IMG/VR virus record: IMGVR_UViG_3300050014_000823
Coordinates: 124,001-188,000 of that record
DNA length: 64,000 nucleotides
Strand: one strand, 5' to 3'
Made by a program: the position numbers and the translations under genes. The notes below the pieces were generated by a model. The model was not told where the DNA came from. It saw nothing but the letters and a program-made list of their open reading frames with translations, and did not search any database. Below, one piece after another: positions 49,294-63,601 of the stretch (positions are counted from its first letter, which is position 1; each line of letters starts with the position of its first letter).

Positions 49294-50133
49294 TTATTTA
49301 AGTCCTTGTATTAATGTATCGCCATATTTAATGCCATCATATCCCATATGCTGTGCTTTTTCGGCAATTGCTTTATTTTTTAAGTTAATTGGTGGAACTT
49401 TATATTGTTCACCTAATTTTTCAAAGTTTACGTGCGGAAACCATGCTTTAGCAAGTACTTCTGCAGGTATTTGGCTGTCCTTATACTCGATGCCTAAGTC
49501 ATTGGTATCAAGTAAGTTTTCAAAATCAATCTGATATTTAATAAATCCTTCAACAGGTGTTAATGTAAAGAAATTTCCAATGACGGACCTTTCTTTAATT
49601 GGTTCTCTACGATACGCAATTATCGACTGGTCATTTTTGCTTGGATTTTCTGATTCAACGCCTGCATTATTTTCTTCAAGTGCTGAAAGAAATTCATTGT
49701 AGCTTACACCTGAGTTTGTTTGATTATTTGCATTAAGAACATCCTGTCCGACCACTTCTTCCATTTTCTGCACTTCGGTATAGTCATAAACGTCCTGTAT
49801 TTTATTTAAAAGTCTGCAGGCATCTTTAAATTCTAAGTCGATTTTAATTGCTGTCAACGGTAAGTTATCTGTTGTGGCAAAAACATACCGATGATGCCCG
49901 TCACAGATGGTATTTTCTTTATCAAGCCAAATTGGATTCATATCATTTGGCTTTGCTTTTTCAACATCATCAGAAAAAGTAAATCCTTGTGACACATTTA
50001 AATTTTTTAACTCTTCTGGACTAATTTGAATGTATTCATAATCAACACCCTCCTCATCGAGTTGTTTCACGACAGCATCAACAGGTGCGCTAATCTGTGG
50101 CAAATAGTACGGCTTGTGTTTCATTCTTATCAT
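49294..50133 (-). CDS. ParB/sulfiredoxin-like N-terminal domain protein
   Basis: PIWLDKENTICDGHHRYV motif. Confidence 0.6.
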   Translation of the reverse strand: MIRMKHKPYYLPQISAPVDAVVKQLDEEGVDYEYIQISPEELKNLNVSQGFTFSDDVEKAKPNDMNPIWLDKENTICDGHHRYVFATTDNLPLTAIKIDLEFKDACRLLNKIQDVYDYTEVQKMEEVVGQDVLNANNQTNSGVSYNEFLSALEENNAGVESENPSKNDQSIIAYRREPIKERSVIGNFFTLTPVEGFIKYQIDFENLLDTNDLGIEYKDSQIPAEVLAKAWFPHVNFEKLGEQYKVPPINLKNKAIAEKAQHMGYDGIKYGDTLIQGLK

Positions 50134-50873
50134 ATTACTGACAAATTTTTTAATTCACATTCTAATGCTTCTTTAACAGTGCCTAATACAGAATAAGGTA
50201 TTTTAATTAATTTATAGCCATTGTTAATAGCATAATTAATTTTAATTTTGTCACGTTTTTTTGTATCCAATAAAGCATTGTCACCACCAAAAAAATCAAC
50301 AGATTTATAATGTTGAATTCCATCGAACTCTATGAATATTTTATGTTTGGGTAGATAAAAATCATAATATAAATTCGAAACAGATTTTAAATTATTAAAT
50401 GTTACTTCACGCTCAAAGTTAATGTTGTGTTTCAACAAAATATTTGCTATTTGTTCTTCATTATGTGAAGCACGACATTTTCTACATCCATATCCATGTA
50501 AATGTGCATGGGGCGTTTGTTCAAATTTACCATGCTTATTACAAATAATCGTTATTTTGTTTTCATATCCACCATATTTTACTAACGAATAATCAAATCT
50601 ATTGCCGTGCATTTCTTTTGCTTTTTCAATAAAAGTTTCATTGGTGAACCTATTTTCTTTTGAGATTTTTTCGTATTGACATTTCTTACACCCATATCCC
50701 GTTAAATGGTCATTCGGTGTTTGCAAAAATTCTCCATGTTTAGTACAAATAATAATAACTTTATTTTTGTTGCCAACATACTCAACTTTCGAATAATCAT
50801 ATTTATCACCATGTTTATTTAGTGATTTTAATATGAATTCTCCTGTGTTTGATTTTTTTGTTGACCTAATCAT
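50130..50873 (-). CDS. Free-standing endonuclease (DUF723-like repeats plus Vsr-like domain), copy 2
   Basis: Same repeat and YDFYLPKHKIFIEFDG.QH core as copy 1; late motif at 50887-50895. Confidence 0.75.
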   Translation of the reverse strand: MIRSTKKSNTGEFILKSLNKHGDKYDYSKVEYVGNKNKVIIICTKHGEFLQTPNDHLTGYGCKKCQYEKISKENRFTNETFIEKAKEMHGNRFDYSLVKYGGYENKITIICNKHGKFEQTPHAHLHGYGCRKCRASHNEEQIANILLKHNINFEREVTFNNLKSVSNLYYDFYLPKHKIFIEFDGIQHYKSVDFFGGDNALLDTKKRDKIKINYAINNGYKLIKIPYSVLGTVKEALECELKNLSVI

Positions 50874-50896: not shown

Positions 50897-51475
50897 TCAG
50901 ATTATAATTTTTTTTAGTTCGTCTTGAATAATGCATAATGCATTCTGACTTCGACTTGTTTCTGTCAAAGCAATAGTACCTTCAGTTGCACGATAAATAT
51001 TAAATTCAACACCCGATGGTAGTTTACTTCTGATTTCTTCGTATGCTTCAATATCAACATCACGGTCCTCATAGACGTTTATTACCTTCAAGTCTGGTAG
51101 TTGCTGTACATAACGCATAACCTTAACACCTTTGTTGCCTTCTGCACGTTTCATGTCAAATTTATCGACTTTGATTTTATTTGCATCAAGTACTGCTTCA
51201 ACTTCTGAACGTAGTTTTTCCATTCTCGATGTTAAAACAATAACATAAGTTCCGGGAGTTACAATCTCTTTTTTGAGTTGTTTTAACACACTTGGAAATG
51301 GTTTGATGTCAAAAACCTCTAAGTCCAGGCTTTCTGGTCTACCCCACCATCCACTAAATGGATATTCTTTATCCATTTTCTCCGACCATTCTTTTTTACC
51401 TGTTTCTGGCATAGGAGAATTCATAAGTGTCCCGTCAAAATCAAATACTGCTAATCTCTTAATCATAACAAACAA
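50897..51475 (-). CDS. HAD phosphatase of the RNA-repair type (Swiss-army-knife HAD-like)
   Basis: AVFDFDGTLMNSP.P (motif I), W.GWW..P.SL, VLTSR (motif II), VYEDR (motif IV). Confidence 0.75.
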   Translation of the reverse strand: MFVMIKRLAVFDFDGTLMNSPMPETGKKEWSEKMDKEYPFSGWWGRPESLDLEVFDIKPFPSVLKQLKKEIVTPGTYVIVLTSRMEKLRSEVEAVLDANKIKVDKFDMKRAEGNKGVKVMRYVQQLPDLKVINVYEDRDVDIEAYEEIRSKLPSGVEFNIYRATEGTIALTETSRSQNALCIIQDELKKIII

Positions 51476-51961: not shown

Positions 51962-54900
51962 TTATTCTACTTCGGTTACTTTTCCTGTTAATATCAATGG
52001 TTCACTCAAATTTACCCACATGCTTAATTGATTTGACATCATTGGTTTACCACCCTGTGCACGATTTACGGCAATAGTTATATGTGGCTTCTTATTCTTT
52101 GTGAGATATTTATCCACCACCACACCAACTGCCATAACCATATCATCCATAGAAAATTCTGTGGCTTCCATAACAATAGTCATGCCCAAGAATTTCAAAT
52201 ACTCTGGAGCAATCGGACCTAAGTTCATTGTCATGTGATGTGCAATAGTTTCCCAACCTTCGGGAATCATATTACCAAGTCTCTTAAGCAATGCTGTACG
52301 GGATTTGTCATCAAGCACCACGGCAGTATATTTCACATTTTTATTCATGTCTTCGTCAAGTACTTCGTTATCAACTAATTTGTGATATAAATCGTGTTTT
52401 AATTTTTCATCATGGCTGAAATCCTCATAATTATTCTGTAAGAATTCCAATACGGATTTATCTGATGCACTTTCATATCCACCTTGATTCCACTCATAAT
52501 ATTTATCCGTAAAGAAATTAATATCAACCTGTTGTCCATTTACGTTCCAAGTAGGCTTCTCTTGACCTGTTTCAGGATAACTATATTCGTTAAGTGTAAT
52601 TGGTTCGCCTTTAACATTCTCATAATACTCCGGATAAAAATTATATTGAGGATTACGTCTTTTTGCAGCTCTTAAGAAGTCATTAACAATTTTTATGTTG
52701 TCATAATCATATTCATCTGCAGCAAAATCATAACTACTGTCAGCCAAACCGAAATCATTTGTGCTTCCAATTCTGTTTACAAGCATCCATTCAGTCAAAT
52801 AATTATACATGGCTTCTGTATCACCCTCAATAAATCCCAATGCTCTACCAATATTACCATGATTAAAATAACCGTCCTTTTGTGCAAGAAATAAATTGCC
52901 CTCTTGGTCAATTATTCCTCTGACTCCCGGACCGATATTCCGTAATGATTTAGGATTTTCATATATTGGTGACTTTTTACCATTTCTATCTCTTACCATA
53001 GCAACTGGTTCTTCTTCCTGTGCCTGTACTGCACCCCTTGCAATCACGTCTTGTTCTGCACTCTGATTTGGCATGTTAAACATCCTTTCAGCAGCTTTAT
53101 CGGCAATACTTTCATCTACACTACCGTCAAGCATAAGTTTATCGCCATCATTGCCTTTATGACCTTTCCAAGTATAAACCAATTCAGTACCGTTAAGCAT
53201 TCTGTTCTTCTCGAATGGTTTAATGTACTTCTGTCCTTCTCCGGGTTTAACATACGCAATTGTAATATGTGGATGATAATCGGGGAATGCACTTGTATGT
53301 GGTAATGCTTTCATTATCTCATTTAATTTTGTAAGTTCTGGAGATTCAACATCGAACTTAACAACATCAAACTTAGGATTACCAGTGAAAAACGATATGC
53401 CCTTAATTCCTATCTTAATTGGTTCTATCGGCATATTTTTTTCAAACAAACTAAAGCAATCTTCTGAAGTTACTTCATCGTGAAAACCATATAATATTGT
53501 AGTATGTGGTTCTGTTTCAATTCCATATCCTGGCTCGTCATAAACATCATCAGGAGAAATTATTGACGTAATTTTTGTCCAAATCGGAACGTCAAGAAAC
53601 AACATCAGACATCCATATTCTATTTTGTCCGTGGGTTTTACTTCTTCCTTAATCATTTCGCCATTTTGTTTCGCCAAAGCTAATAAATCTTCACGATTAT
53701 TCCTAACCTTATCTGCATAAACCTTTAGCAATAATGATTTTTGCATGTCGCCAATTGCCTTACCCTGTAAACCAAGTTGTGACAAATCATTACCATTAAC
53801 AGCTAATTCGTTGACAGTTTTAGGATATTTGCCCTGTTGAAATTCTTCTGAGGCTTTTTGAAGTCCCATTGGAATTATCTGACTCTGTAATGCCTGTGGA
53901 CTTAGCAGATACATATTATGTGCAATTGACCTATCGAGAACATCATGTGTTATGTCGGGTAATGTAAACGCTAATTCAAGTGCTTTAATTTCCTTATATG
54001 TTGGGATATCACCTTTGAGATTATTCTTGTAAAATTCCGAAGGACTCTGAACAGTACCAACTGCCAACAGATAAATAAATTCACCCATTGTTTTAACATC
54101 GGCAATTCTATCGCTAATCTGCTTTGGCTGTCCACCGAAAATCTGTTCATATAAGCCAGTATTCACAAGTAAATCCGCACCCATTTTCACATTACCCTTC
54201 TTGATTATCTTATCGAATTCCGTTAAAATTCTCTCTGGTGCAATTTCTTTAACCCTCTGGGCATTTTCTTTTATCATCTGCATAGTCTGTGGCTCAATTG
54301 TAAACCCGAAACGTGATGCAAATTGTACTGCACGCAACATTCTCAATGGGTCATCACTGAATGCCTGTGGATTAACAATACGAATAATTTTGTTTTTAAG
54401 GTCTTCTTGACCACCAAATGGGTCAACTATATTACCCTCTGAATCTTTTGCAATAGCATTAATTGTAAAATCCCTGCGTTCCAAGTCTTTTTCAATCGGT
54501 AGTGCATGGTCAGACTTAACATCAAAACCTTGATGACCACCTTCACCCGTAGCTGTTTCAGTACGTGGAATAGCAATGTCAATATCATCGGTAGCACCCT
54601 TTGGCTTGAATTTCAACACACCAAATGATTTACCAACAGCATCTACACGACCATATTTGCCAAGAAGTTGTTCAAGTTCTTCAAACGGCACACCAGTAAT
54701 AAGCACATCCAAATCTTTGGATTGTTTACCAAGAAATTCATCCCGGACCGCACCACCAACACTATAAATTTTACCACCAAGTTGCTCAACCTCTTGTTTG
54801 AAAGGCAAGTCTTGTAATGACATTATTTCCGCTTCGTTCATGACTGATTCTTCAAGTGCATTATCTCCATAAAAACGTATTGATTCCGCTATGAATTCCA

Positions 54901-57900
54901 TAGTCGGATTTTTTTCTTTTGCCAAAGATAAGAATTTTTCGTAATATGGCAACGCTTCTTCTCTTTTTGGTACAGTTTCCCAATAACTTGAATGAAAGTT
55001 TCTTTTTTCTTCTGGATATAACGGTGCATTTGACTCTCCAACTAAGATGATATTATCTCTTTTATATCGTTGAACAGTCAAAAAATTAGTTGGTGGGGTT
55101 TTATCCCAATGTTCCTCATTTTCAATGACTCCCAAGCTATTGAGGGTATAGAGTAATTCGAAGTGTATAACAACACTTTTTTGTTCAGTGTATAAGTTTC
55201 CTTCTTTGTCAACAACACCCCGGACATCACCCCAAATATTTTTCCAAGATTTCGGATTTTTTATTATTACCAACCCATTTTCGGGATTATTGTAAACGAT
55301 ATCTTCGGAATCCTGCTCCCTGTTGAACCTATCGTTGAATTCTGCATCAGGATTCGGAACATTAAACATTTTTTCCGCAGCAACATCCGCTACACCTTCG
55401 TCAACACTTACTGGTTCTCCTTCAATAAAAGTATAATATTCTTCATAAAACTCATATTGTGGATTTCGTCTTTTTGTGGCTTTCAATATATCAATTGCAT
55501 TGTCATAGTTATGCGCATTTGAATTAATATATCTTGAAGAAATGTCCCCCAAACCGAAATTATTTGTTAAGTCAACCCTATTAAGTAATTGATATTTATC
55601 TAATTCTGAATATATTCTTGCATCAATCGTGAATAATCCCAATGCTTTTGCTATATTACCGTGGGTAAATGAATAATCTGCTTGTGCAACATATAGATTT
55701 CCATCTGTATCTGCGATTGCCCGTACATCCCTTTGAAATCTTTCTAAGGATTTGGGATTTTTATAAATTTGACTAACTCTTCCAATGGTATCTACTACTT
55801 CTCCAACAGGTTCATTCGTATTTTTTTCTATCTCACCCTGTGCTTGAACGTCTTGTTCTGCATGTGGGTCGGGAATATTAAATGCTTTCTCAGCATATTT
55901 ATCAGCCACACCTTCCATTTGATATTTCTTACCACCCGTAGGTTTGAAATTCTTCTTAAATGCAGTGTACATCAGACTTGAAATTCTTTCAGATTCTCCT
56001 TCTTCACTGATACTCTCTGTTCTTTTTCTGAAAAGCAATTCAACTTTATTTGCAATGTCATGGGCGTTATCGTATGTATAACCATAATGCTTGATAAGAT
56101 AGCTTTCAACCCTTTCATGAAGTAAAATCCCTTCAAAGTCGTTTGGCTTTGTCAAATGTACGTCATCAACCCAAAGTTCGTCTGCTGGAATGTGCTTAGC
56201 ATATTTTTGCTGTGATTTTGGTAAGTCATAGTCAACCCAATGATTGCCACCTTCAACCCACTCAATAAAACCACTGTCACGCACTTCGTCACCATTAACT
56301 GCATAAACGGGATTGACATCAATACCGTCATTGTATGTACGGATTAATTTCTTATCCAATTCATGTGTAGTATTGTCTTTCTCAATCTGTGGTTCACTTA
56401 CAGGAAATTCTTCTTCGTGTATTGTGTTTTTCATTTTATCGAGATACTGCTCATAGTCTGTATCTTGAAATATTTCAGAAGTTTCTTCGTCTGGCTCATC
56501 GTATGCTTCTAAACCATTAATCTCATAGAAAGCATTCATTCTCTTTTTAAAATCATCAGTAATATCGACTTTGCCAATATAATGACCTTGTACTGCCCTT
56601 CTGAATCTAACTTCTTTTAAATAAGTAAAATCACCTATTTCCCAATGAGAAATGTCCGCATCGGGTTTTTCGTTTATTTCATAAACATAAAAAACTCCCG
56701 GATTTTTACCGTGTTGCATAAACATCGAATACAGTCCCATTAAAGCACCACCAACACTTTTACTTGCAGCAATTTCTGGTGTTTCACTAACCCAAAACGT
56801 ATCATACTTATATATTGGATTACCGTCATCGTCAATTGCTTCGTAATAACCTTCGGGTTCAAATTCAATCGTTTCACCCATATATTTTTCAACAGCACGA
56901 TAATATTTTTCACCACCACTTGTTACCACTTCATTTATTGCAGTATTGGGAAGTCTGTACATCAACTGCATAGTCTGGAAGTCCTTATTCCTGCCTTTGT
57001 TCATGATAAATCCCAATGATTTATACCATGCAGTTAGTTTAGACTTACTTGCGCCCCACATACTATCGGGAGTTAATGTAACAATTAATTTATTTCTGTC
57101 GGCATAGTCAAAGATAAGTTTCATTGCATCATTGGCATATCCTTTACCTCTGAATTCTTTGTTGATAAAAATTTTATCTATTGCGATGTAATGATTCTGA
57201 CCTTGAACGCCTCTGTCCATGATACCTACCTCACCAACGACTTGACCATCATCAGTTATCTTAAGCGAATCATATCCGCTTAAATTGTTTGGTAGATTAA
57301 GATTCACAGACTCTTTAATACTACCAAATGTCAAGTTGCCAATATCTCCTTGATTACAGGCAGTGCTTGTACCGTCACCATTACCACCAAGTCTGCACTT
57401 TTTCTTAACATCAACAGTTTTACTGCCAGATTGAAACGACTGAACTCTTTCTGTTATTTGAAATTCGTCTTGGGTTGCATCACCGACAACATGGTTATAT
57501 TCTAAGTCTTCGTTTACTTCACTGTTTGCGTTTAAATCGTTGCTTATTGAGGGTGAAGTGTCCATATTATTGTATGTTGGAAAATTATCTTGACCAAAAC
57601 TATTGTCTGTCGAATATAATGCTGAACCGTCTTCGTCAACTTGAACAGGTTCTGGCATATTATTAGATTTAAAAAAATAATTACCAAAACCTACATCAAA
57701 AAATCCCAAATTACCATTTGGTTTATATCCTAAGTTATTTGGATTTGTATAATCTGTACTTTCTAAGCCGTATTTTTTTACTTCTTCGCCAATTTTAAGT
57801 ATTTTATCAAAAAATTCTCTGTCTTGTGGATTTCTTGCAAAGTATTTTTGAACCTTATCTTCATCCACATTGTCATCGCCAAAACGATTGTGTATGAAAT

Positions 57901-60028
57901 GGTCAAGAACATCGCCATAGTTTGCACCCATTATTTTTTCAAACGCAAATTTCATTCTTTCAACTCTTGCAATAAAATCAGCCTTATCTGTTCTTAACTT
58001 CTCTAAGATTATCACATAAAGGTCATATCTCGTTTCGCCCGACAATGTATTAGACTTAATTGAGTAGACCTTATATGGTTGAGCAATGTATTCTAATGGT
58101 TTACCAATAAGTTCAAGATTTTCATTTGCTTCGCTTTGGTCCTTAGTAACCTTTAATACTAAATTGTTTCCTATATCATATGCATAGCCAAATACACCAT
58201 CACCAAGAGGTTTTGGCTGACCATATCCAAACTTCTGTGCTACACTATTCGCCACTTTATTAGCGACTTCTCTCGGAAATCCTGTAGGTTCTTCATTCAG
58301 TACTTCTTCACCTTCGGGTAAAGAAATTCGGTTTTCTGGTGGTAAATCCGGTACAACTACACCCATGCATCCACCTATGTCATAGTATGTTAAAATACCG
58401 TTCTTATATCCCAAATTACTGAGAGTCATATAATCGTCTGACTTAATCATCAGTGCAAGTAATTCTCTTTTAATGTCATAGAGTCCCAACATAAAACGAT
58501 ATGCCTTTTCTCTATCGCCTGCAGCAATATTAGCATCGGGATTTGCCGTTAAAATTAGTTTAGCTAATTCTGGAAAATCGTTAAATGTTTTTCCAAAAAA
58601 TTCCGTATCTTCTTTCTTAGGTTTACCTTTGATTAAAATTCTCAATAACCTACCGTATAAGTCTTCACCGAGCGAATTAATTATTTCAGTGTATCTTTCA
58701 AATTCCTGATGTGGTTTATCAACAATATTGTCTTCGATAAGCGCATAAACTGCTTTGTTTTGTTCGGTGTCAGTTACCTTATACACATTGTAAACCATTG
58801 CAAGTGTTTTAGGCTTACCCCTGCTAATTTTTAAACCAGCATCGACCTCACATGCATCAGTAGTAATTTTTAAAACCCTGTTGTTATTAACCTCATAAGC
58901 ATATCCATATCCACCACCACCAAGATATTTAATAGCACCAAGATTTAACTTCTGTGCAACCGCATTAGCAAGAGTATCAGAATATTCTCTTGGTAATTGC
59001 ATTGCTGCAACTTTTGGACTACTCTCATTTATTTCTACAGTTTCTTCCTCAAGTGGTTCTCTATCATAGAATTTACCTCTGATAAGATAGTCTTGAAGTT
59101 CCAATAAGTTACTATAAAATTTCTTTTTCTCAGGTACGTGTTCAAGTACTTCTTTAAGGTTGTTTACTACATCATGAAATTCATCGACAATATATGGAGC
59201 ACTTGGAAGTTTTGATGTTGGATATTTGTCTCTGTTGAGTACAAATGAAATAAAATCTTCATTAATTACGCCAGGTCCGTCACCTACACCGTAAGGCATA
59301 AGTCCCCACATAGCTTGTCGGGTATCAACGGCATCTTGTGGTGGTAAATCACCAAGCATATCGTCATTACCATCGGCAAAGTTATAAAGTTCATACATTT
59401 GATACTTTTGGTTTTTGCCACTATAATGAGTATCTACAACTTCATCATTTAACCCATAGTCGGTTAAAACTATTGCAGGTTTACCGTTACGCAGTACTTC
59501 TCCAAAGGTACTTGGTCTACCCATATCGCCTGAGTTTTGAGCATAGCTTGCAACAAAATCGGCTAATGAAAATGCAAATTCGTTTTTATTCCAAAAAAAT
59601 TCTTCAAGTTCGGGTGATTGTGGAAATATTTTCTTATGCCCCTTACTTAATTCTTCGGCATTCTTAAGAAACTCTTTTAAATCATTCAAACTTGGAATAC
59701 CTGTTACTTGTTTAATACGTGCTTCATTGACTTTCTTAGCCTTTTCTGCTATCAACCAAGTATCGTCATCCATAGAATCAATAACCTTTGCAAGTATATG
59801 ATGATTGCTTTCAAAATATCCTGCACCTGTCTCTGCTTCGTTTTGACCAACACCTTTGGGGTTTTTCGCAAGTTTTAATACCTTTTCACCATCAATGTCA
59901 TAAACGATTCGACCACTACCACTACCAATTCTCGGTAAGTATTGATTTGCGTACTTTATTTTTCCATTAAATGATTTAATTTTAAGGAATTCTGGTAAGA
60001 AATTCGTTTTGAATTCAGCGTATGTCAT
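51962..60028 (-). CDS. 2688-aa multi-enzyme polyprotein: 3 kinase-like domains, GNAT, ART-like, HExxE domain, 3 copies of an unknown domain, CCA-adding enzyme, 2 2H phosphoesterases
   Basis: Kinase GxGxxG/VLK/DxG x3; GNAT FRGKGYA; CCA motifs GGAVRD..DLD, RRDFTINA, DPLRMLR; 2H motif pairs HTT/HIT and HMT/HIT; late motif at 60049-60057. Confidence 0.85.
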   Translation of the reverse strand: MTYAEFKTNFLPEFLKIKSFNGKIKYANQYLPRIGSGSGRIVYDIDGEKVLKLAKNPKGVGQNEAETGAGYFESNHHILAKVIDSMDDDTWLIAEKAKKVNEARIKQVTGIPSLNDLKEFLKNAEELSKGHKKIFPQSPELEEFFWNKNEFAFSLADFVASYAQNSGDMGRPSTFGEVLRNGKPAIVLTDYGLNDEVVDTHYSGKNQKYQMYELYNFADGNDDMLGDLPPQDAVDTRQAMWGLMPYGVGDGPGVINEDFISFVLNRDKYPTSKLPSAPYIVDEFHDVVNNLKEVLEHVPEKKKFYSNLLELQDYLIRGKFYDREPLEEETVEINESSPKVAAMQLPREYSDTLANAVAQKLNLGAIKYLGGGGYGYAYEVNNNRVLKITTDACEVDAGLKISRGKPKTLAMVYNVYKVTDTEQNKAVYALIEDNIVDKPHQEFERYTEIINSLGEDLYGRLLRILIKGKPKKEDTEFFGKTFNDFPELAKLILTANPDANIAAGDREKAYRFMLGLYDIKRELLALMIKSDDYMTLSNLGYKNGILTYYDIGGCMGVVVPDLPPENRISLPEGEEVLNEEPTGFPREVANKVANSVAQKFGYGQPKPLGDGVFGYAYDIGNNLVLKVTKDQSEANENLELIGKPLEYIAQPYKVYSIKSNTLSGETRYDLYVIILEKLRTDKADFIARVERMKFAFEKIMGANYGDVLDHFIHNRFGDDNVDEDKVQKYFARNPQDREFFDKILKIGEEVKKYGLESTDYTNPNNLGYKPNGNLGFFDVGFGNYFFKSNNMPEPVQVDEDGSALYSTDNSFGQDNFPTYNNMDTSPSISNDLNANSEVNEDLEYNHVVGDATQDEFQITERVQSFQSGSKTVDVKKKCRLGGNGDGTSTACNQGDIGNLTFGSIKESVNLNLPNNLSGYDSLKITDDGQVVGEVGIMDRGVQGQNHYIAIDKIFINKEFRGKGYANDAMKLIFDYADRNKLIVTLTPDSMWGASKSKLTAWYKSLGFIMNKGRNKDFQTMQLMYRLPNTAINEVVTSGGEKYYRAVEKYMGETIEFEPEGYYEAIDDDGNPIYKYDTFWVSETPEIAASKSVGGALMGLYSMFMQHGKNPGVFYVYEINEKPDADISHWEIGDFTYLKEVRFRRAVQGHYIGKVDITDDFKKRMNAFYEINGLEAYDEPDEETSEIFQDTDYEQYLDKMKNTIHEEEFPVSEPQIEKDNTTHELDKKLIRTYNDGIDVNPVYAVNGDEVRDSGFIEWVEGGNHWVDYDLPKSQQKYAKHIPADELWVDDVHLTKPNDFEGILLHERVESYLIKHYGYTYDNAHDIANKVELLFRKRTESISEEGESERISSLMYTAFKKNFKPTGGKKYQMEGVADKYAEKAFNIPDPHAEQDVQAQGEIEKNTNEPVGEVVDTIGRVSQIYKNPKSLERFQRDVRAIADTDGNLYVAQADYSFTHGNIAKALGLFTIDARIYSELDKYQLLNRVDLTNNFGLGDISSRYINSNAHNYDNAIDILKATKRRNPQYEFYEEYYTFIEGEPVSVDEGVADVAAEKMFNVPNPDAEFNDRFNREQDSEDIVYNNPENGLVIIKNPKSWKNIWGDVRGVVDKEGNLYTEQKSVVIHFELLYTLNSLGVIENEEHWDKTPPTNFLTVQRYKRDNIILVGESNAPLYPEEKRNFHSSYWETVPKREEALPYYEKFLSLAKEKNPTMEFIAESIRFYGDNALEESVMNEAEIMSLQDLPFKQEVEQLGGKIYSVGGAVRDEFLGKQSKDLDVLITGVPFEELEQLLGKYGRVDAVGKSFGVLKFKPKGATDDIDIAIPRTETATGEGGHQGFDVKSDHALPIEKDLERRDFTINAIAKDSEGNIVDPFGGQEDLKNKIIRIVNPQAFSDDPLRMLRAVQFASRFGFTIEPQTMQMIKENAQRVKEIAPERILTEFDKIIKKGNVKMGADLLVNTGLYEQIFGGQPKQISDRIADVKTMGEFIYLLAVGTVQSPSEFYKNNLKGDIPTYKEIKALELAFTLPDITHDVLDRSIAHNMYLLSPQALQSQIIPMGLQKASEEFQQGKYPKTVNELAVNGNDLSQLGLQGKAIGDMQKSLLLKVYADKVRNNREDLLALAKQNGEMIKEEVKPTDKIEYGCLMLFLDVPIWTKITSIISPDDVYDEPGYGIETEPHTTILYGFHDEVTSEDCFSLFEKNMPIEPIKIGIKGISFFTGNPKFDVVKFDVESPELTKLNEIMKALPHTSAFPDYHPHITIAYVKPGEGQKYIKPFEKNRMLNGTELVYTWKGHKGNDGDKLMLDGSVDESIADKAAERMFNMPNQSAEQDVIARGAVQAQEEEPVAMVRDRNGKKSPIYENPKSLRNIGPGVRGIIDQEGNLFLAQKDGYFNHGNIGRALGFIEGDTEAMYNYLTEWMLVNRIGSTNDFGLADSSYDFAADEYDYDNIKIVNDFLRAAKRRNPQYNFYPEYYENVKGEPITLNEYSYPETGQEKPTWNVNGQQVDINFFTDKYYEWNQGGYESASDKSVLEFLQNNYEDFSHDEKLKHDLYHKLVDNEVLDEDMNKNVKYTAVVLDDKSRTALLKRLGNMIPEGWETIAHHMTMNLGPIAPEYLKFLGMTIVMEATEFSMDDMVMAVGVVVDKYLTKNKKPHITIAVNRAQGGKPMMSNQLSMWVNLSEPLILTGKVTEVE

Positions 60029-62118: not shown

Positions 62119-62904
62119 TTAATCGTACTTTTTAAACGATAATGTTATGTATTCAATCAAATTTGGTACAATGTCCAGGTAATGCATTTCATCCACATCA
62201 TACCAACCATAGTTTGTGTTTTCGGCATTATCTAACTCAATTTCAGTTGGGTCGCCCTCATATCGACAAGCAAAAACTGTTTCAATGCTCTCAGGATTCC
62301 TTTGTATTGTGAAGGTCCTGACAAACTTATTAATTTCCAACCCAATTTCTTCAAGTATCTCTCTCTCAATAGCACGCTGTGGAGTTTCACCCTTCTCAAT
62401 AGCACCACCAACCAATGCCCATTTCTCCGGCATCCAAGGTGCTTCTTTGCCTCTTTTCAACAGTAAAATCTTATTGTCGTTATTTACAATAACTGCAACG
62501 GCATTTTTTTGTTTTTCTTCTTTCTTCTCTTTCTTTTCTTCATTCAGTGTTGGCATGGGACTATTCGGCATTAATTCTGAATTAGGATTTGATGTCATAT
62601 CCTGCTTGGTTTCTTTTGACCTTGCCACACCTGCTCTATCTTGTGCTAATGAAGTTTCAATAAACTGTCTCATTGCTTCCCCACCAGCAAGGGCATATTG
62701 TGTTTTATCATCAGTCTGTGGATTAAAATAATCAAAGAAGTTTTTAAGTCTTTTCATTGCTTGATATGTTAAATTACCGTTCTTAAGAATGAAATTAGCA
62801 CGTTTAAGACCATTTTCATTCGAAGTGGATGCTTTAGCCACCGCAATACCATTAAGTACATTTGAGGGTATCCTATATGTCTTATCTTTGAGATATTGGT
62901 TCAT
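62119..62904 (-). CDS. NUDIX hydrolase fused to an N-terminal helical domain
   Basis: Nudix box GGAIEKGETPQRAIEREILEEIGL; TLNEE linker. Confidence 0.85.
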   Translation of the reverse strand: MNQYLKDKTYRIPSNVLNGIAVAKASTSNENGLKRANFILKNGNLTYQAMKRLKNFFDYFNPQTDDKTQYALAGGEAMRQFIETSLAQDRAGVARSKETKQDMTSNPNSELMPNSPMPTLNEEKKEKKEEKQKNAVAVIVNNDNKILLLKRGKEAPWMPEKWALVGGAIEKGETPQRAIEREILEEIGLEINKFVRTFTIQRNPESIETVFACRYEGDPTEIELDNAENTNYGWYDVDEMHYLDIVPNLIEYITLSFKKYD

Positions 62905-63601
62905 ATGCTTCTAAGATTTTGTTTATTCTGTTGATTTGGTCAAACTTTATTCTCAATAGAAAGTAGTTGTTTGATTCTGCAAAAGTATTTTTTATTTCAT
63001 CGTTAATTTTCTGGATTCTAAACTTATCAAGTCCACCGAAATGGTTATTAGCTATAAAGTGTTGTGCACCATCAAACTCTATTAATACGTTGTTCTCTGG
63101 AAGAAAAAAATCGAATGCAAGTTTATTTATATTTTTACAGTCATTAAATTTTTTCTCTCTTTCAAAAGCAATTGAATTATTTATTAAATATTTTGCAATC
63201 TCTCTTTCTCCGATAGATTCTGTACAACTGGGACAACCACATCCTTTTAAATGAGTATTTGGTTTTTGATTAAATTTTCCATGAATCGGACATAATATTT
63301 CTACATAAATATGTGCTGTTATATAGTTAACATTAGAATAATCATATCTATCTCCGTGAATTTCTTTTGCTTTAGTAATAAAATAATCAGTATTTTTTCT
63401 TAATTTCATTTTACCACACAATGGACAACCACAACCCTCTAAATGAGTATTTACTCGCTGTATGAATTCGCCATGTGTGGGACATGATATGATAATATTA
63501 TCGTGTGTATGTTTAAAATCAACCAAATCATACTCATAATAATTATTGTGCACAGCATTTGCTTTAGCAATAAACGCATCTATAGTTAATATCCTTGCCA
63601 T
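62882..63601 (-). CDS. Free-standing endonuclease (DUF723-like repeats plus Vsr-like domain), copy 3
   Basis: Same repeats and FDFFLPENNVLIEFDGAQH core; overlaps both neighbours. Confidence 0.75.
   Translation of the reverse strand: MARILTIDAFIAKANAVHNNYYEYDLVDFKHTHDNIIISCPTHGEFIQRVNTHLEGCGCPLCGKMKLRKNTDYFITKAKEIHGDRYDYSNVNYITAHIYVEILCPIHGKFNQKPNTHLKGCGCPSCTESIGEREIAKYLINNSIAFEREKKFNDCKNINKLAFDFFLPENNVLIEFDGAQHFIANNHFGGLDKFRIQKINDEIKNTFAESNNYFLLRIKFDQINRINKILEAYEPISQR

What the first reader, a model, noticed from the sequence alone, without database searches (positions are those of the whole stretch)
53140..53630. Acb1-like 2H phosphoesterase embedded in the polyprotein (anti-CBASS candidate)
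SEEN: EPHTTILYG...PDYHPHITIAYV, with two HxT motifs each followed by xxY. KNOWN: T4 Acb1 (gp57B) is a 2H enzyme with an H-S-T-x-x-Y / DYxPHITxxY pattern that degrades cyclic oligonucleotide signals. INFERENCE: this domain could destroy CBASS or type III CRISPR second messengers right after injection, a role distinct from the second 2H domain.
Basis: partly seen in the sequence, partly recalled or inferred. Interest (0 to 1): 0.68.

Follow-up and report, generated by a model that had tools for sequence, protein, structure and literature searches.

The report
Acb1-related phosphoesterase domain in giant phage protein
A jumbo phage carries, inside a 2,688-residue multi-enzyme protein, an intact 2H phosphoesterase domain from a phage-only family that is a distant cousin of the T4 anti-CBASS enzyme Acb1; it may destroy bacterial alarm nucleotides, but that is untested and RNA-end repair is a serious alternative.

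Summary
Both HxTxxY motifs lie on the minus strand, inside one 2,688-codon ORF of a 299-kb phage. HTTILY is at 53489-53506 and FPDYHPHITIAY at 53252-53287.

The domain folds as a confident 2H phosphoesterase (pLDDT 91).
- Its only PHROG hit is the T4 Acb1 family.
- It sits at the Pfam Acb1 threshold (27.1 bits against 27).
- It shares the Acb1 active-site signature.

It is not a canonical Acb1.
- On a tree it belongs to a separate, virus-only family of mostly stand-alone proteins of 165-190 aa.
- One member, Maribacter phage Colly_1 gp180, is already catalogued as "2H PDE 11".
- The Acb1 C-terminal lid residues are not found.

Degradation of cyclic-oligonucleotide signals is my leading reading (about 0.45). 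RNA 3'-end healing is the main rival (about 0.3). Nothing bears on proteolytic processing or injection.

The parts
51962..60028 (-). Giant ORF, 2,688 aa. Module order: kinase-like repeats (my reading of glycine-loop motifs only), GNAT, unknown modules, repeats R1 and R2, CCA-adding enzyme, 2H-1, repeat R3, unknown module, 2H-2.
   Evidence: ORF list and translation. Pfam on the whole protein: GNAT 925-1007, PolyA_pol head 1754-1883, RNA-binding 1908-1964, tRNA_NucTran2_2 2054-2118, 2H 2172-2265. Internal repeats: R1 vs R3 47% identity, E 5e-48; K2 vs K3 32%.
53123..53626 (-). 2H-1: the Acb1-related 2H phosphoesterase domain (residues about 2135-2302). This is the finding.
53489..53506 (-). Catalytic motif 1, HTTILY (H2175, T2177, Y2180).
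   Evidence: Translation. H and T are invariant in 28 of 28 family members; the Y position is aromatic in 28 of 28. Aligns to Acb1 H44/T46/Y49.
53252..53287 (-). Catalytic motif 2 with the Acb1-type flank, FPDYHPHITIAY (F2248, Y2251, H2254, T2256, Y2259).
   Evidence: Translation. Y117, H120, T122 and Y125 are invariant; position 114 is aromatic in 27 of 28. Aligns to Acb1 (F/Y)PDYxPHITLSY, where T4 F107 is a base-stacking residue.
53387..53389 (-). Invariant Phe (F2214; F80 of the domain). It aligns with the Acb1 base-stacking position W74.
   Evidence: 28 of 28 F. Profile alignments place it on the FBB1 F / T4 W74 column. The role of W74 is from PMC9117128.
53663..54811 (-). Class II CCA-adding tRNA nucleotidyltransferase domain, directly N-terminal of 2H-1.
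   Evidence: Pfam PolyA_pol 3e-23 and PolyA_pol_RNAbd 1e-16. NCBIfam CCA tRNA nucleotidyltransferase NF009814, 166 bits over profile positions 14-393 of 396; only the head/neck of the HD-containing multifunctional Cca model is matched.
51965..52336 (-). 2H-2: a compact CNPase/Trl1-CPD-like 2',3'-cyclic phosphodiesterase domain at the C-terminus.
50897..51475 (-). Neighbouring gene for a HAD phosphatase of the polynucleotide-kinase/phosphatase or 'Swiss Army Knife RNA repair' type. The match is weak.
   Evidence: PHROG 415 polynucleotide kinase, E 1e-6. Pfam HAD_SAK_1 22.2 bits, below the cut-off of 25.6. NCBIfam HAD-IIIC 21 bits.

Best explanation
Residues about 2135-2302 of the giant protein form an active, metal-independent 2H phosphoesterase. 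It belongs to a virus-restricted family (the 'PDE-11 family', mostly stand-alone proteins of 165-190 aa) that is the nearest detectable relative of T4 Acb1 but is a separate clade. I propose that it works like Acb1. The two HxT motifs act as acid and base. The substrate's own 2'-OH attacks a 3'-5' phosphodiester of a host cyclic oligonucleotide alarm signal (CBASS, or possibly type III CRISPR). The ring opens through a 2',3'-cyclic phosphate intermediate, and the effector is never switched on. Conserved aromatic residues (F2214 for Acb1 W74, F2248 for F107, possibly Y2138 for Y12) would stack on the bases. The domain was captured once from a stand-alone phage gene into the site behind the CCA-adding enzyme, and it has since been kept or lost as an optional cassette. 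Shown here: the fold, the intact catalytic tetrad, the family relationships, the cassette behaviour, and the difference from the second 2H domain. Inferred: the substrate and the anti-defence role.
Confidence: 0.45

Rival explanations
1. RNA (tRNA) 3'-end healing. 2H-1 opens 2',3'-cyclic phosphate ends left by host defence ribonucleases. A HAD phosphatase removes the phosphate, and the fused CCA-adding enzyme rebuilds the tRNA 3' end. In this view 2H-1 stands in for the HD domain of the E. coli multifunctional Cca.
For: Wherever 2H-1 occurs in the giant proteins it sits directly behind the CCA domain, in 5 of 5 loci covering three diverged lineages. The CCA domain lacks an HD domain. One family subclade is fused to, or overlapped by, an RNase T-like DEDD exonuclease. 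As established knowledge, RNase T is an enzyme of tRNA 3'-end turnover. HAD_SAK 'RNA repair' phosphatases lie adjacent in L027, 14 genes away in Molly, and (a weak, below-cut-off match) two genes away in this genome. Tpt1 is nearby in L025. The phage has two Rnl2-type RNA ligases and only one tRNA. PF13563 scores higher than the Acb1 model (32.4 against 27.1 bits). The jumbo-phage survey PMC7824862 assigns 2H and CCA enzymes to RNA repair.
Against: A CNPase/Trl1-CPD-type 2H-2 is already the constant partner of the CCA enzyme, so 2H-1 would be redundant. 2H-1 is gained or lost without affecting the CCA/2H-2 pair; L009 and L019 are sisters at 100/100 and differ in carrying it. The embedded copies form one clade, so the CCA adjacency is essentially one evolutionary event. 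ThpR and LigT_PEase models are not met. Colly_1 has the family member without a CCA enzyme or any recognised RNA ligase.
Confidence: 0.3
2. It processes another small phosphodiester. Candidates are ADP-ribose 1''-2'' cyclic phosphate (Appr>p, the Tpt1 by-product), free 2',3'-cNMPs, or a messenger not yet described.
Against: This genome has no Tpt1. The neighbourhood links are loose, several genes away in accessory regions. No sequence feature specific to plant or yeast CPDases was found.
Confidence: 0.12
3. It is a non-catalytic or merely structural module of the giant protein.
For: None specific. Many modules of the protein have no recognisable function.
Against: Both HxT motifs and about ten further residues are invariant across 28 family members, and both motifs are intact in all five embedded copies.
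Confidence: 0.03

Closest known systems
Maribacter phage Colly_1 gp180 (YP_010357429.1), listed as '2H PDE 11' in Doherty et al. 2025, bioRxiv 10.1101/2025.08.21.671373
   Same: Same family. tblastn gives 43.6% identity over 76% of the domain, E 3e-23. It is the best BFVD structural match (E 5e-12, TM 0.73-0.79). It has the same borderline Pfam pair, PF13563 plus PF23474 (shown for its near-identical Molly homologue).
   Different: It is a stand-alone 161-aa protein in a 124-kb phage that has no CCA enzyme or RNA ligase. Here the domain is embedded in a 2,688-aa protein. Its assay result is not available as text.
T4 / Erwinia phage FBB1 Acb1 (Pfam PF23474, PHROG 755; PDB 7T26, 7T27)
   Different: It lies in a separate clade across a very long branch. 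Only the stretch from motif 1 to motif 2 (76 columns) aligns with confidence. The C-terminal lid (W147) and E141 were not found. The domain is larger, about 168 residues against 152. It is embedded rather than free.
Burkholderia phage BCSR5 2H PDE-9 (PDB 9Q2G, 9Q2Y)
   Different: About 15-17% identity in the structural alignment. PDE-9 is in structural group 3 with T4 Acb1, and the family representative PDE-11 is not listed there.
LigT/ThpR RNA 2',3'-cyclic phosphodiesterases (PF02834, TIGR02258; PDB 1IUH, 1VDX, 5LDI)
   Same: Same fold with equal Z (12.3-12.7). The catch-all PF13563 model is met at 32.4 bits. The family profile hits P. horikoshii LigT at E 5.6e-4.
   Different: TIGR02258 scores 24.4 bits against a cut-off of 65.7, and LigT_PEase 13.9 against 23.3. 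Motif 2 ends in Y rather than the R seen in HITLGR, and motif 1 has Y rather than F. The family is virus-only.
E. coli multifunctional CCA-adding/repair enzyme (NTase + HD domain)
   Same: A CCA-adding nucleotidyltransferase carrying a C-terminal phosphoesterase domain. The NTase head matches NF008137 at 159 bits.
   Different: The appended domain is 2H, not HD. This is an analogy of architecture, not homology, and the appended domain is optional among relatives.

Membership tests
2H phosphoesterase superfamily | Two HxT/S motifs on a pseudo-twofold alpha+beta fold | tested here: met
   [not shown]
Acb1 (Pfam PF23474 / PHROG 755) | Score at or above the curated Pfam gathering threshold (27 bits) | tested here: inconclusive
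   27.1 bits for the excised domain. 21.7 bits within the whole protein. 26.4 bits, or 27.4 with its neighbours in the frame, in the six-frame search. This sits exactly on the line. T4 Acb1 itself scores 202.7 bits.
Acb1 (Pfam PF23474 / PHROG 755) | Best or only match among phage protein families is the Acb1 family | tested here: met
   phrog_755 is the sole hit, E 5.3e-9 and 36.8 bits. T4 57B scores 228.5 bits on it.
Acb1 (Pfam PF23474 / PHROG 755) | Catalytic tetrad H44/T46/H113/T115 with the HxTxxY and (F/Y)xDYxPH context | tested here: met
   HTTILY and FPDYHPHITIAY align to Acb1 HSTICY and FDDYTPHITLSY. Residue roles are from PMC9117128.
Acb1 (Pfam PF23474 / PHROG 755) | Base-stacking aromatics Y12, W74, F107, W147 and the adenine contact E141 | tested here: inconclusive
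   W74 aligns to invariant F2214, and F107 to F2248 (aromatic in 27 of 28). Y12 aligns to Y2138 only in a low-confidence global hhalign. W147 and E141 have no conserved counterpart.
Acb1 (Pfam PF23474 / PHROG 755) | Short C-terminal lid that closes over the ligand | tested here: not met
   The C-terminal region does not align to Acb1. The family tail has no conserved Trp. Here the C-terminus runs on into repeat R3. An N-terminal lid like that of PDE-9 is possible but not shown.
Acb1 (Pfam PF23474 / PHROG 755) | Falls within the Acb1 clade on a tree | tested here: not met
   Acb1 sequences form a 100/100 clade. It is separated from the 38-member family holding this domain by branches of 3.8 and 3.0 substitutions per site.
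Acb1 (Pfam PF23474 / PHROG 755) | Cleaves 3'3'-cGAMP or cyclic trinucleotides and protects phage from CBASS | not testable with these tools
   This needs biochemistry. The family member PDE-11 was assayed by Doherty et al., but the result is in figures only.
LigT/ThpR RNA 2',3'-cyclic phosphodiesterase | Meets the TIGR02258 or PF02834 thresholds | tested here: not met
   TIGR02258: 24.4 bits against 65.7. PF02834: 13.9 bits against 23.3. Only the superfamily-level PF13563 is met, at 32.4 bits against 27.
CNPase / Trl1-CPD type cyclic phosphodiesterase | Fold distinctly closest to CNPase, or a tRNA_lig_CPD match | tested here: not met
   [not shown]

The most novel reading that the evidence does not exclude
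The giant protein is a delivered or co-expressed 'toolbox' of host-takeover and counter-defence enzymes. In it, an Acb1-type signal-degrading phosphodiesterase has been welded to a tRNA 3'-end repair unit (CCA-adding enzyme plus CNPase-like CPDase). One polypeptide would then both silence cyclic-oligonucleotide alarm signalling and repair the tRNA damage done by effectors that have already fired. The 2H-1 cassette is swapped in and out between related jumbo phages according to host defences.
Probability: 0.15. Interest if true: 0.75.

Novelty: new variant of a known kind. Interest (0 to 1): 0.45.

Why it matters
If 2H-1 cleaves cyclic oligonucleotides, it would extend Acb1-type immune evasion to a large phage-only sister family found in marine and freshwater jumbo phages and megaphages. 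It would also show that such an anti-signalling module can be built into a multi-enzyme giant protein next to tRNA repair enzymes. If it instead heals RNA ends, it marks where Acb1-like enzymes branched off from RNA-repair 2H enzymes. It would then warn against reading 'Acb1' Pfam hits near threshold as anti-CBASS genes. Either way, two different 2H clades in one protein, one constant and one optional, give a clean natural experiment on 2H substrate specialisation.

Tried and rejected
- **PDE-11 activity.** I looked in Doherty et al. and in later literature. Only figure legends are held, and no text gives its group or substrates.
- **Near-identical phage records.** Megablast of the gene against 50,697 phage records found nothing.
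- **Other modules of the giant protein.** PHROGs on ten segments gave only an unknown-function family for the N-terminus, GNAT hits, and an unknown-function family for the C-terminus. PDB sequence searches of the kinase-like, R-repeat and middle segments gave nothing. The Atlas gave no lead for repeat R3 (best score 0.78). My reading of the N-terminal repeats as kinase-like therefore rests only on glycine-loop/VLK-type motifs seen by eye.
- **Stand-alone copies elsewhere.** The two complete related genomes have a single copy, inside the giant protein. The other three records searched are 25-39% complete, so absence there means nothing.
- **Steps not run.** No reads tools were used. No code other than table 11 was needed.
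- **Processing or virion packaging.** I found nothing that bears on either.

Full report
**1. What is there**

The window is bases 124001-188000 of a 299,144-bp IMG/VR virus record. It is a jumbo phage with about 35% G+C and an estimated completeness of 91%. The finding lies on the minus strand inside a single ORF, 51962..60028, of 2,688 codons with no stop under table 11.

The quoted peptides are real.
- HTTILY is at 53489-53506(-) and FPDYHPHITIAY at 53252-53287(-).
- Pfam on the whole protein finds a GNAT (925-1007), a class II CCA-adding nucleotidyltransferase (1754-2118) and, directly after it, a 2H phosphoesterase (2172-2265).
- A second HxT/HxT pair closes the protein.

**2. Is it a 2H enzyme, and is it Acb1-like?**

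I excised residues 2135-2310 (P0002). The sequence evidence is as follows.
- It meets PF13563 (2'-5' RNA ligase superfamily, 32.4 bits) and sits exactly on the Acb1 PF23474 threshold (27.1 against 27). LigT_PEase is not met.
- Among 38,880 PHROG families, its only hit is phrog_755 (E 5e-9). T4 57B/Acb1 scores 228 bits on that family, so it is the Acb1 family despite its 'RNA ligase' label.
- The Acb1 Pfam model is specific. It rings in none of 14 cellular control genomes, whereas PF13563 rings in 11.
- By sequence, the best solved relatives are Acb1-type enzymes. These are Burkholderia phage PDE-9 (9Q2G/9Q2Y) and FBB1 Acb1 (7T26). With a family profile, Pyrococcus LigT falls in between.
- hhalign of the family against an Acb1 alignment gives 95% probability and E 2.5e-8, but only over the 76 columns from motif 1 to motif 2.
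- ThpR (TIGR02258) is far below its cut-off, at 24 bits against 65.7.

Acb1 has HxTxxY twice and (F/Y)xDYxPH before the second His, and this domain has the same. Archaeal LigT has F and R at the +5 positions. Two of the four base-stacking aromatics described for Acb1 (W74 and F107; PMC9117128) align to an invariant Phe (F2214) and a conserved aromatic (F2248). Y12 may correspond to Y2138, but only in a low-confidence global alignment. The lid Trp W147 and E141 have no counterpart.

**3. Structure**

**4. The family**

- Homologues are mostly stand-alone proteins of 165-190 aa from large phage contigs and megaphages.
- The nearest Atlas clusters are 100% viral, with mixed PF13563/PF23474 labels.
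- On a tree, the embedded copies form one clade (97/91) nested among the stand-alone proteins. Canonical Acb1 forms its own 100/100 clade across a very long branch.
- The domain is therefore an Acb1 relative, not an Acb1.
- Colly_1 gp180 (YP_010357429.1), 43.6% identical, is '2H PDE 11' in Doherty et al.. It was purified and run on a panel of 18 messengers (the TLC legend I could read lists 14 of them), but the outcome is only in figures not held. It is not listed in structural group 3 with T4 Acb1. In that study five of seven groups cleaved immune messengers and two cleaved nothing.

**5. Context in the giant protein**

Thirteen distinct related loci carry the CCA module in proteins of very different length and module order.
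- 2H-1 is present in five, always directly behind the CCA domain.
- On a CCA tree, carriers and non-carriers are interspersed. At least 2-3 gains or losses are needed, and L009 (with it) is sister to L019 (without it) at 100/100.
- The C-terminal 2H-2 accompanies the CCA enzyme in 12 of 13 loci, either fused or as a separate ORF of 127-137 aa downstream of the CCA gene.

2H-2 is thus the conserved RNA-healing partner of the CCA enzyme, and 2H-1 is an optional extra from a different 2H clade.

**6. Evidence for the RNA-repair rival**

- One family subclade is fused to, or overlapped by, an RNase T-like exonuclease.
- HAD 'Swiss Army Knife RNA repair' phosphatases lie adjacent in L027 and 14 genes away in Molly. 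In this genome a weak, below-cut-off match lies two genes away.
- Tpt1, NUDIX and NAD-salvage genes lie nearby in L025 and L026.
- This phage has two Rnl2-type ligases and only one tRNA.
- The jumbo-phage survey reads 2H and CCA enzymes as RNA repair.

Against this rival:
- 2H-2 would make 2H-1 redundant.
- The CCA adjacency is essentially one evolutionary event.
- Colly_1 keeps a family member although it has no CCA enzyme, Rnl1, Rnl2 or RtcB. T4 served as positive control for Rnl1.

**7. Verdict**

Shown:
- a real, intact 2H phosphoesterase domain;
- a member of a phage-only family that is Acb1's nearest detectable relative, but distinct from it;
- an optional cassette in a multi-enzyme protein;
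- different in kind from the second 2H domain.

Inferred: the substrate.
- Acb1-like opening of cyclic-oligonucleotide signals, about 0.45.
- RNA 3'-end healing, about 0.3.
- Another small phosphodiester such as Appr>p, or an unknown messenger, about 0.12.
- A non-catalytic or structural module, about 0.03.
- The remaining tenth or so is left for roles I have not thought of.

'Polyprotein' in the sense of proteolytic processing, and action 'right after injection', are untested. The same modules occur as separate ORFs in relatives, so this is a domain fusion.

Novelty is modest. Phage 2H diversity, multi-domain 2H proteins and this very family are already catalogued. The new element is the placement behind a CCA enzyme, together with a CNPase-like 2H domain.

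Noticed in passing
[not shown]
   Followed up: yes
window 51962-60028 (-), residues 1372-1545, 1541-1715 and 2306-2480; also 331-580 vs 581-870: The giant protein contains three copies of an unknown module of about 175 aa (R1 vs R3: 47% identity, E 5e-48). Each begins with a conserved (G/S)(V/I)AD-x-x-AE-(K/R)-x-FN-x-P motif after an acidic linker. There are also at least two paralogous N-terminal modules with a glycine-rich loop (GxGxxG ... VLK) that look kinase-like by eye. No family, PDB or Atlas match was found for either.
   Followed up: partly
L008-L021 (related IMG/VR contigs): Related jumbo phages shuffle the same modules (kinase-like, GNAT, R repeats, CCA, 2H-1, 2H-2) into proteins from 422 to 2,693 aa. 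Some modules split off as separate ORFs. This is a striking case of modular giant-protein evolution.
   Followed up: partly
window 56909-57418 (-): The GNAT module matches phrog_10691 (E 1.5e-16). That is an unknown-function family whose profile is 3,925 positions long, so other phages have giant proteins carrying the same acetyltransferase module.
   Followed up: no
G000:C1:1380-1453 (outside the window): The only tRNA that ARAGORN finds in the 299-kb genome has a CTA anticodon, so it would read TAG (reported as tRNA-Pyl). It could be a suppressor tRNA. The giant ORF itself needs no recoding.
   Followed up: no
window 62882-63601 (-) and 50130-50873 (-): Two paralogous HNH homing-endonuclease genes (phrog_559, E 3e-62 and 6e-59) bracket the region that holds the giant gene.
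   Followed up: no
window 62119-62904 (-) and 50897-51475 (-); G000:C1 73105-73581 and 94819-95316: There is a NUDIX hydrolase upstream and a weak HAD_SAK/polynucleotide-kinase-phosphatase-like gene downstream of the giant gene. Two Rnl2-type RNA ligases lie elsewhere in the genome. No RtcB, Rnl1 or Tpt1 was detected.
   Followed up: partly
L002:9950-11266 (LR745206.1) and the contig carrying P0028: In one megaphage, a member of the same 2H family is fused to an RNase T/DEDD exonuclease (438 aa). In the sister lineage, an RNase T-like gene overlaps the end of the 2H gene. The pairing is recurrent.
   Followed up: partly
L003:10514-13567 (LR756508.1): The family B DNA polymerase next to the stand-alone 2H gene carries weak Hint/intein-like matches in its middle (residues about 598-673).
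   Followed up: no
L030:6001-6663: One stand-alone homologue (P0015, 220 aa) lies among large genes next to a weak Phage_base_V (baseplate) match. At least one family member may therefore sit in a structural module.
   Followed up: no
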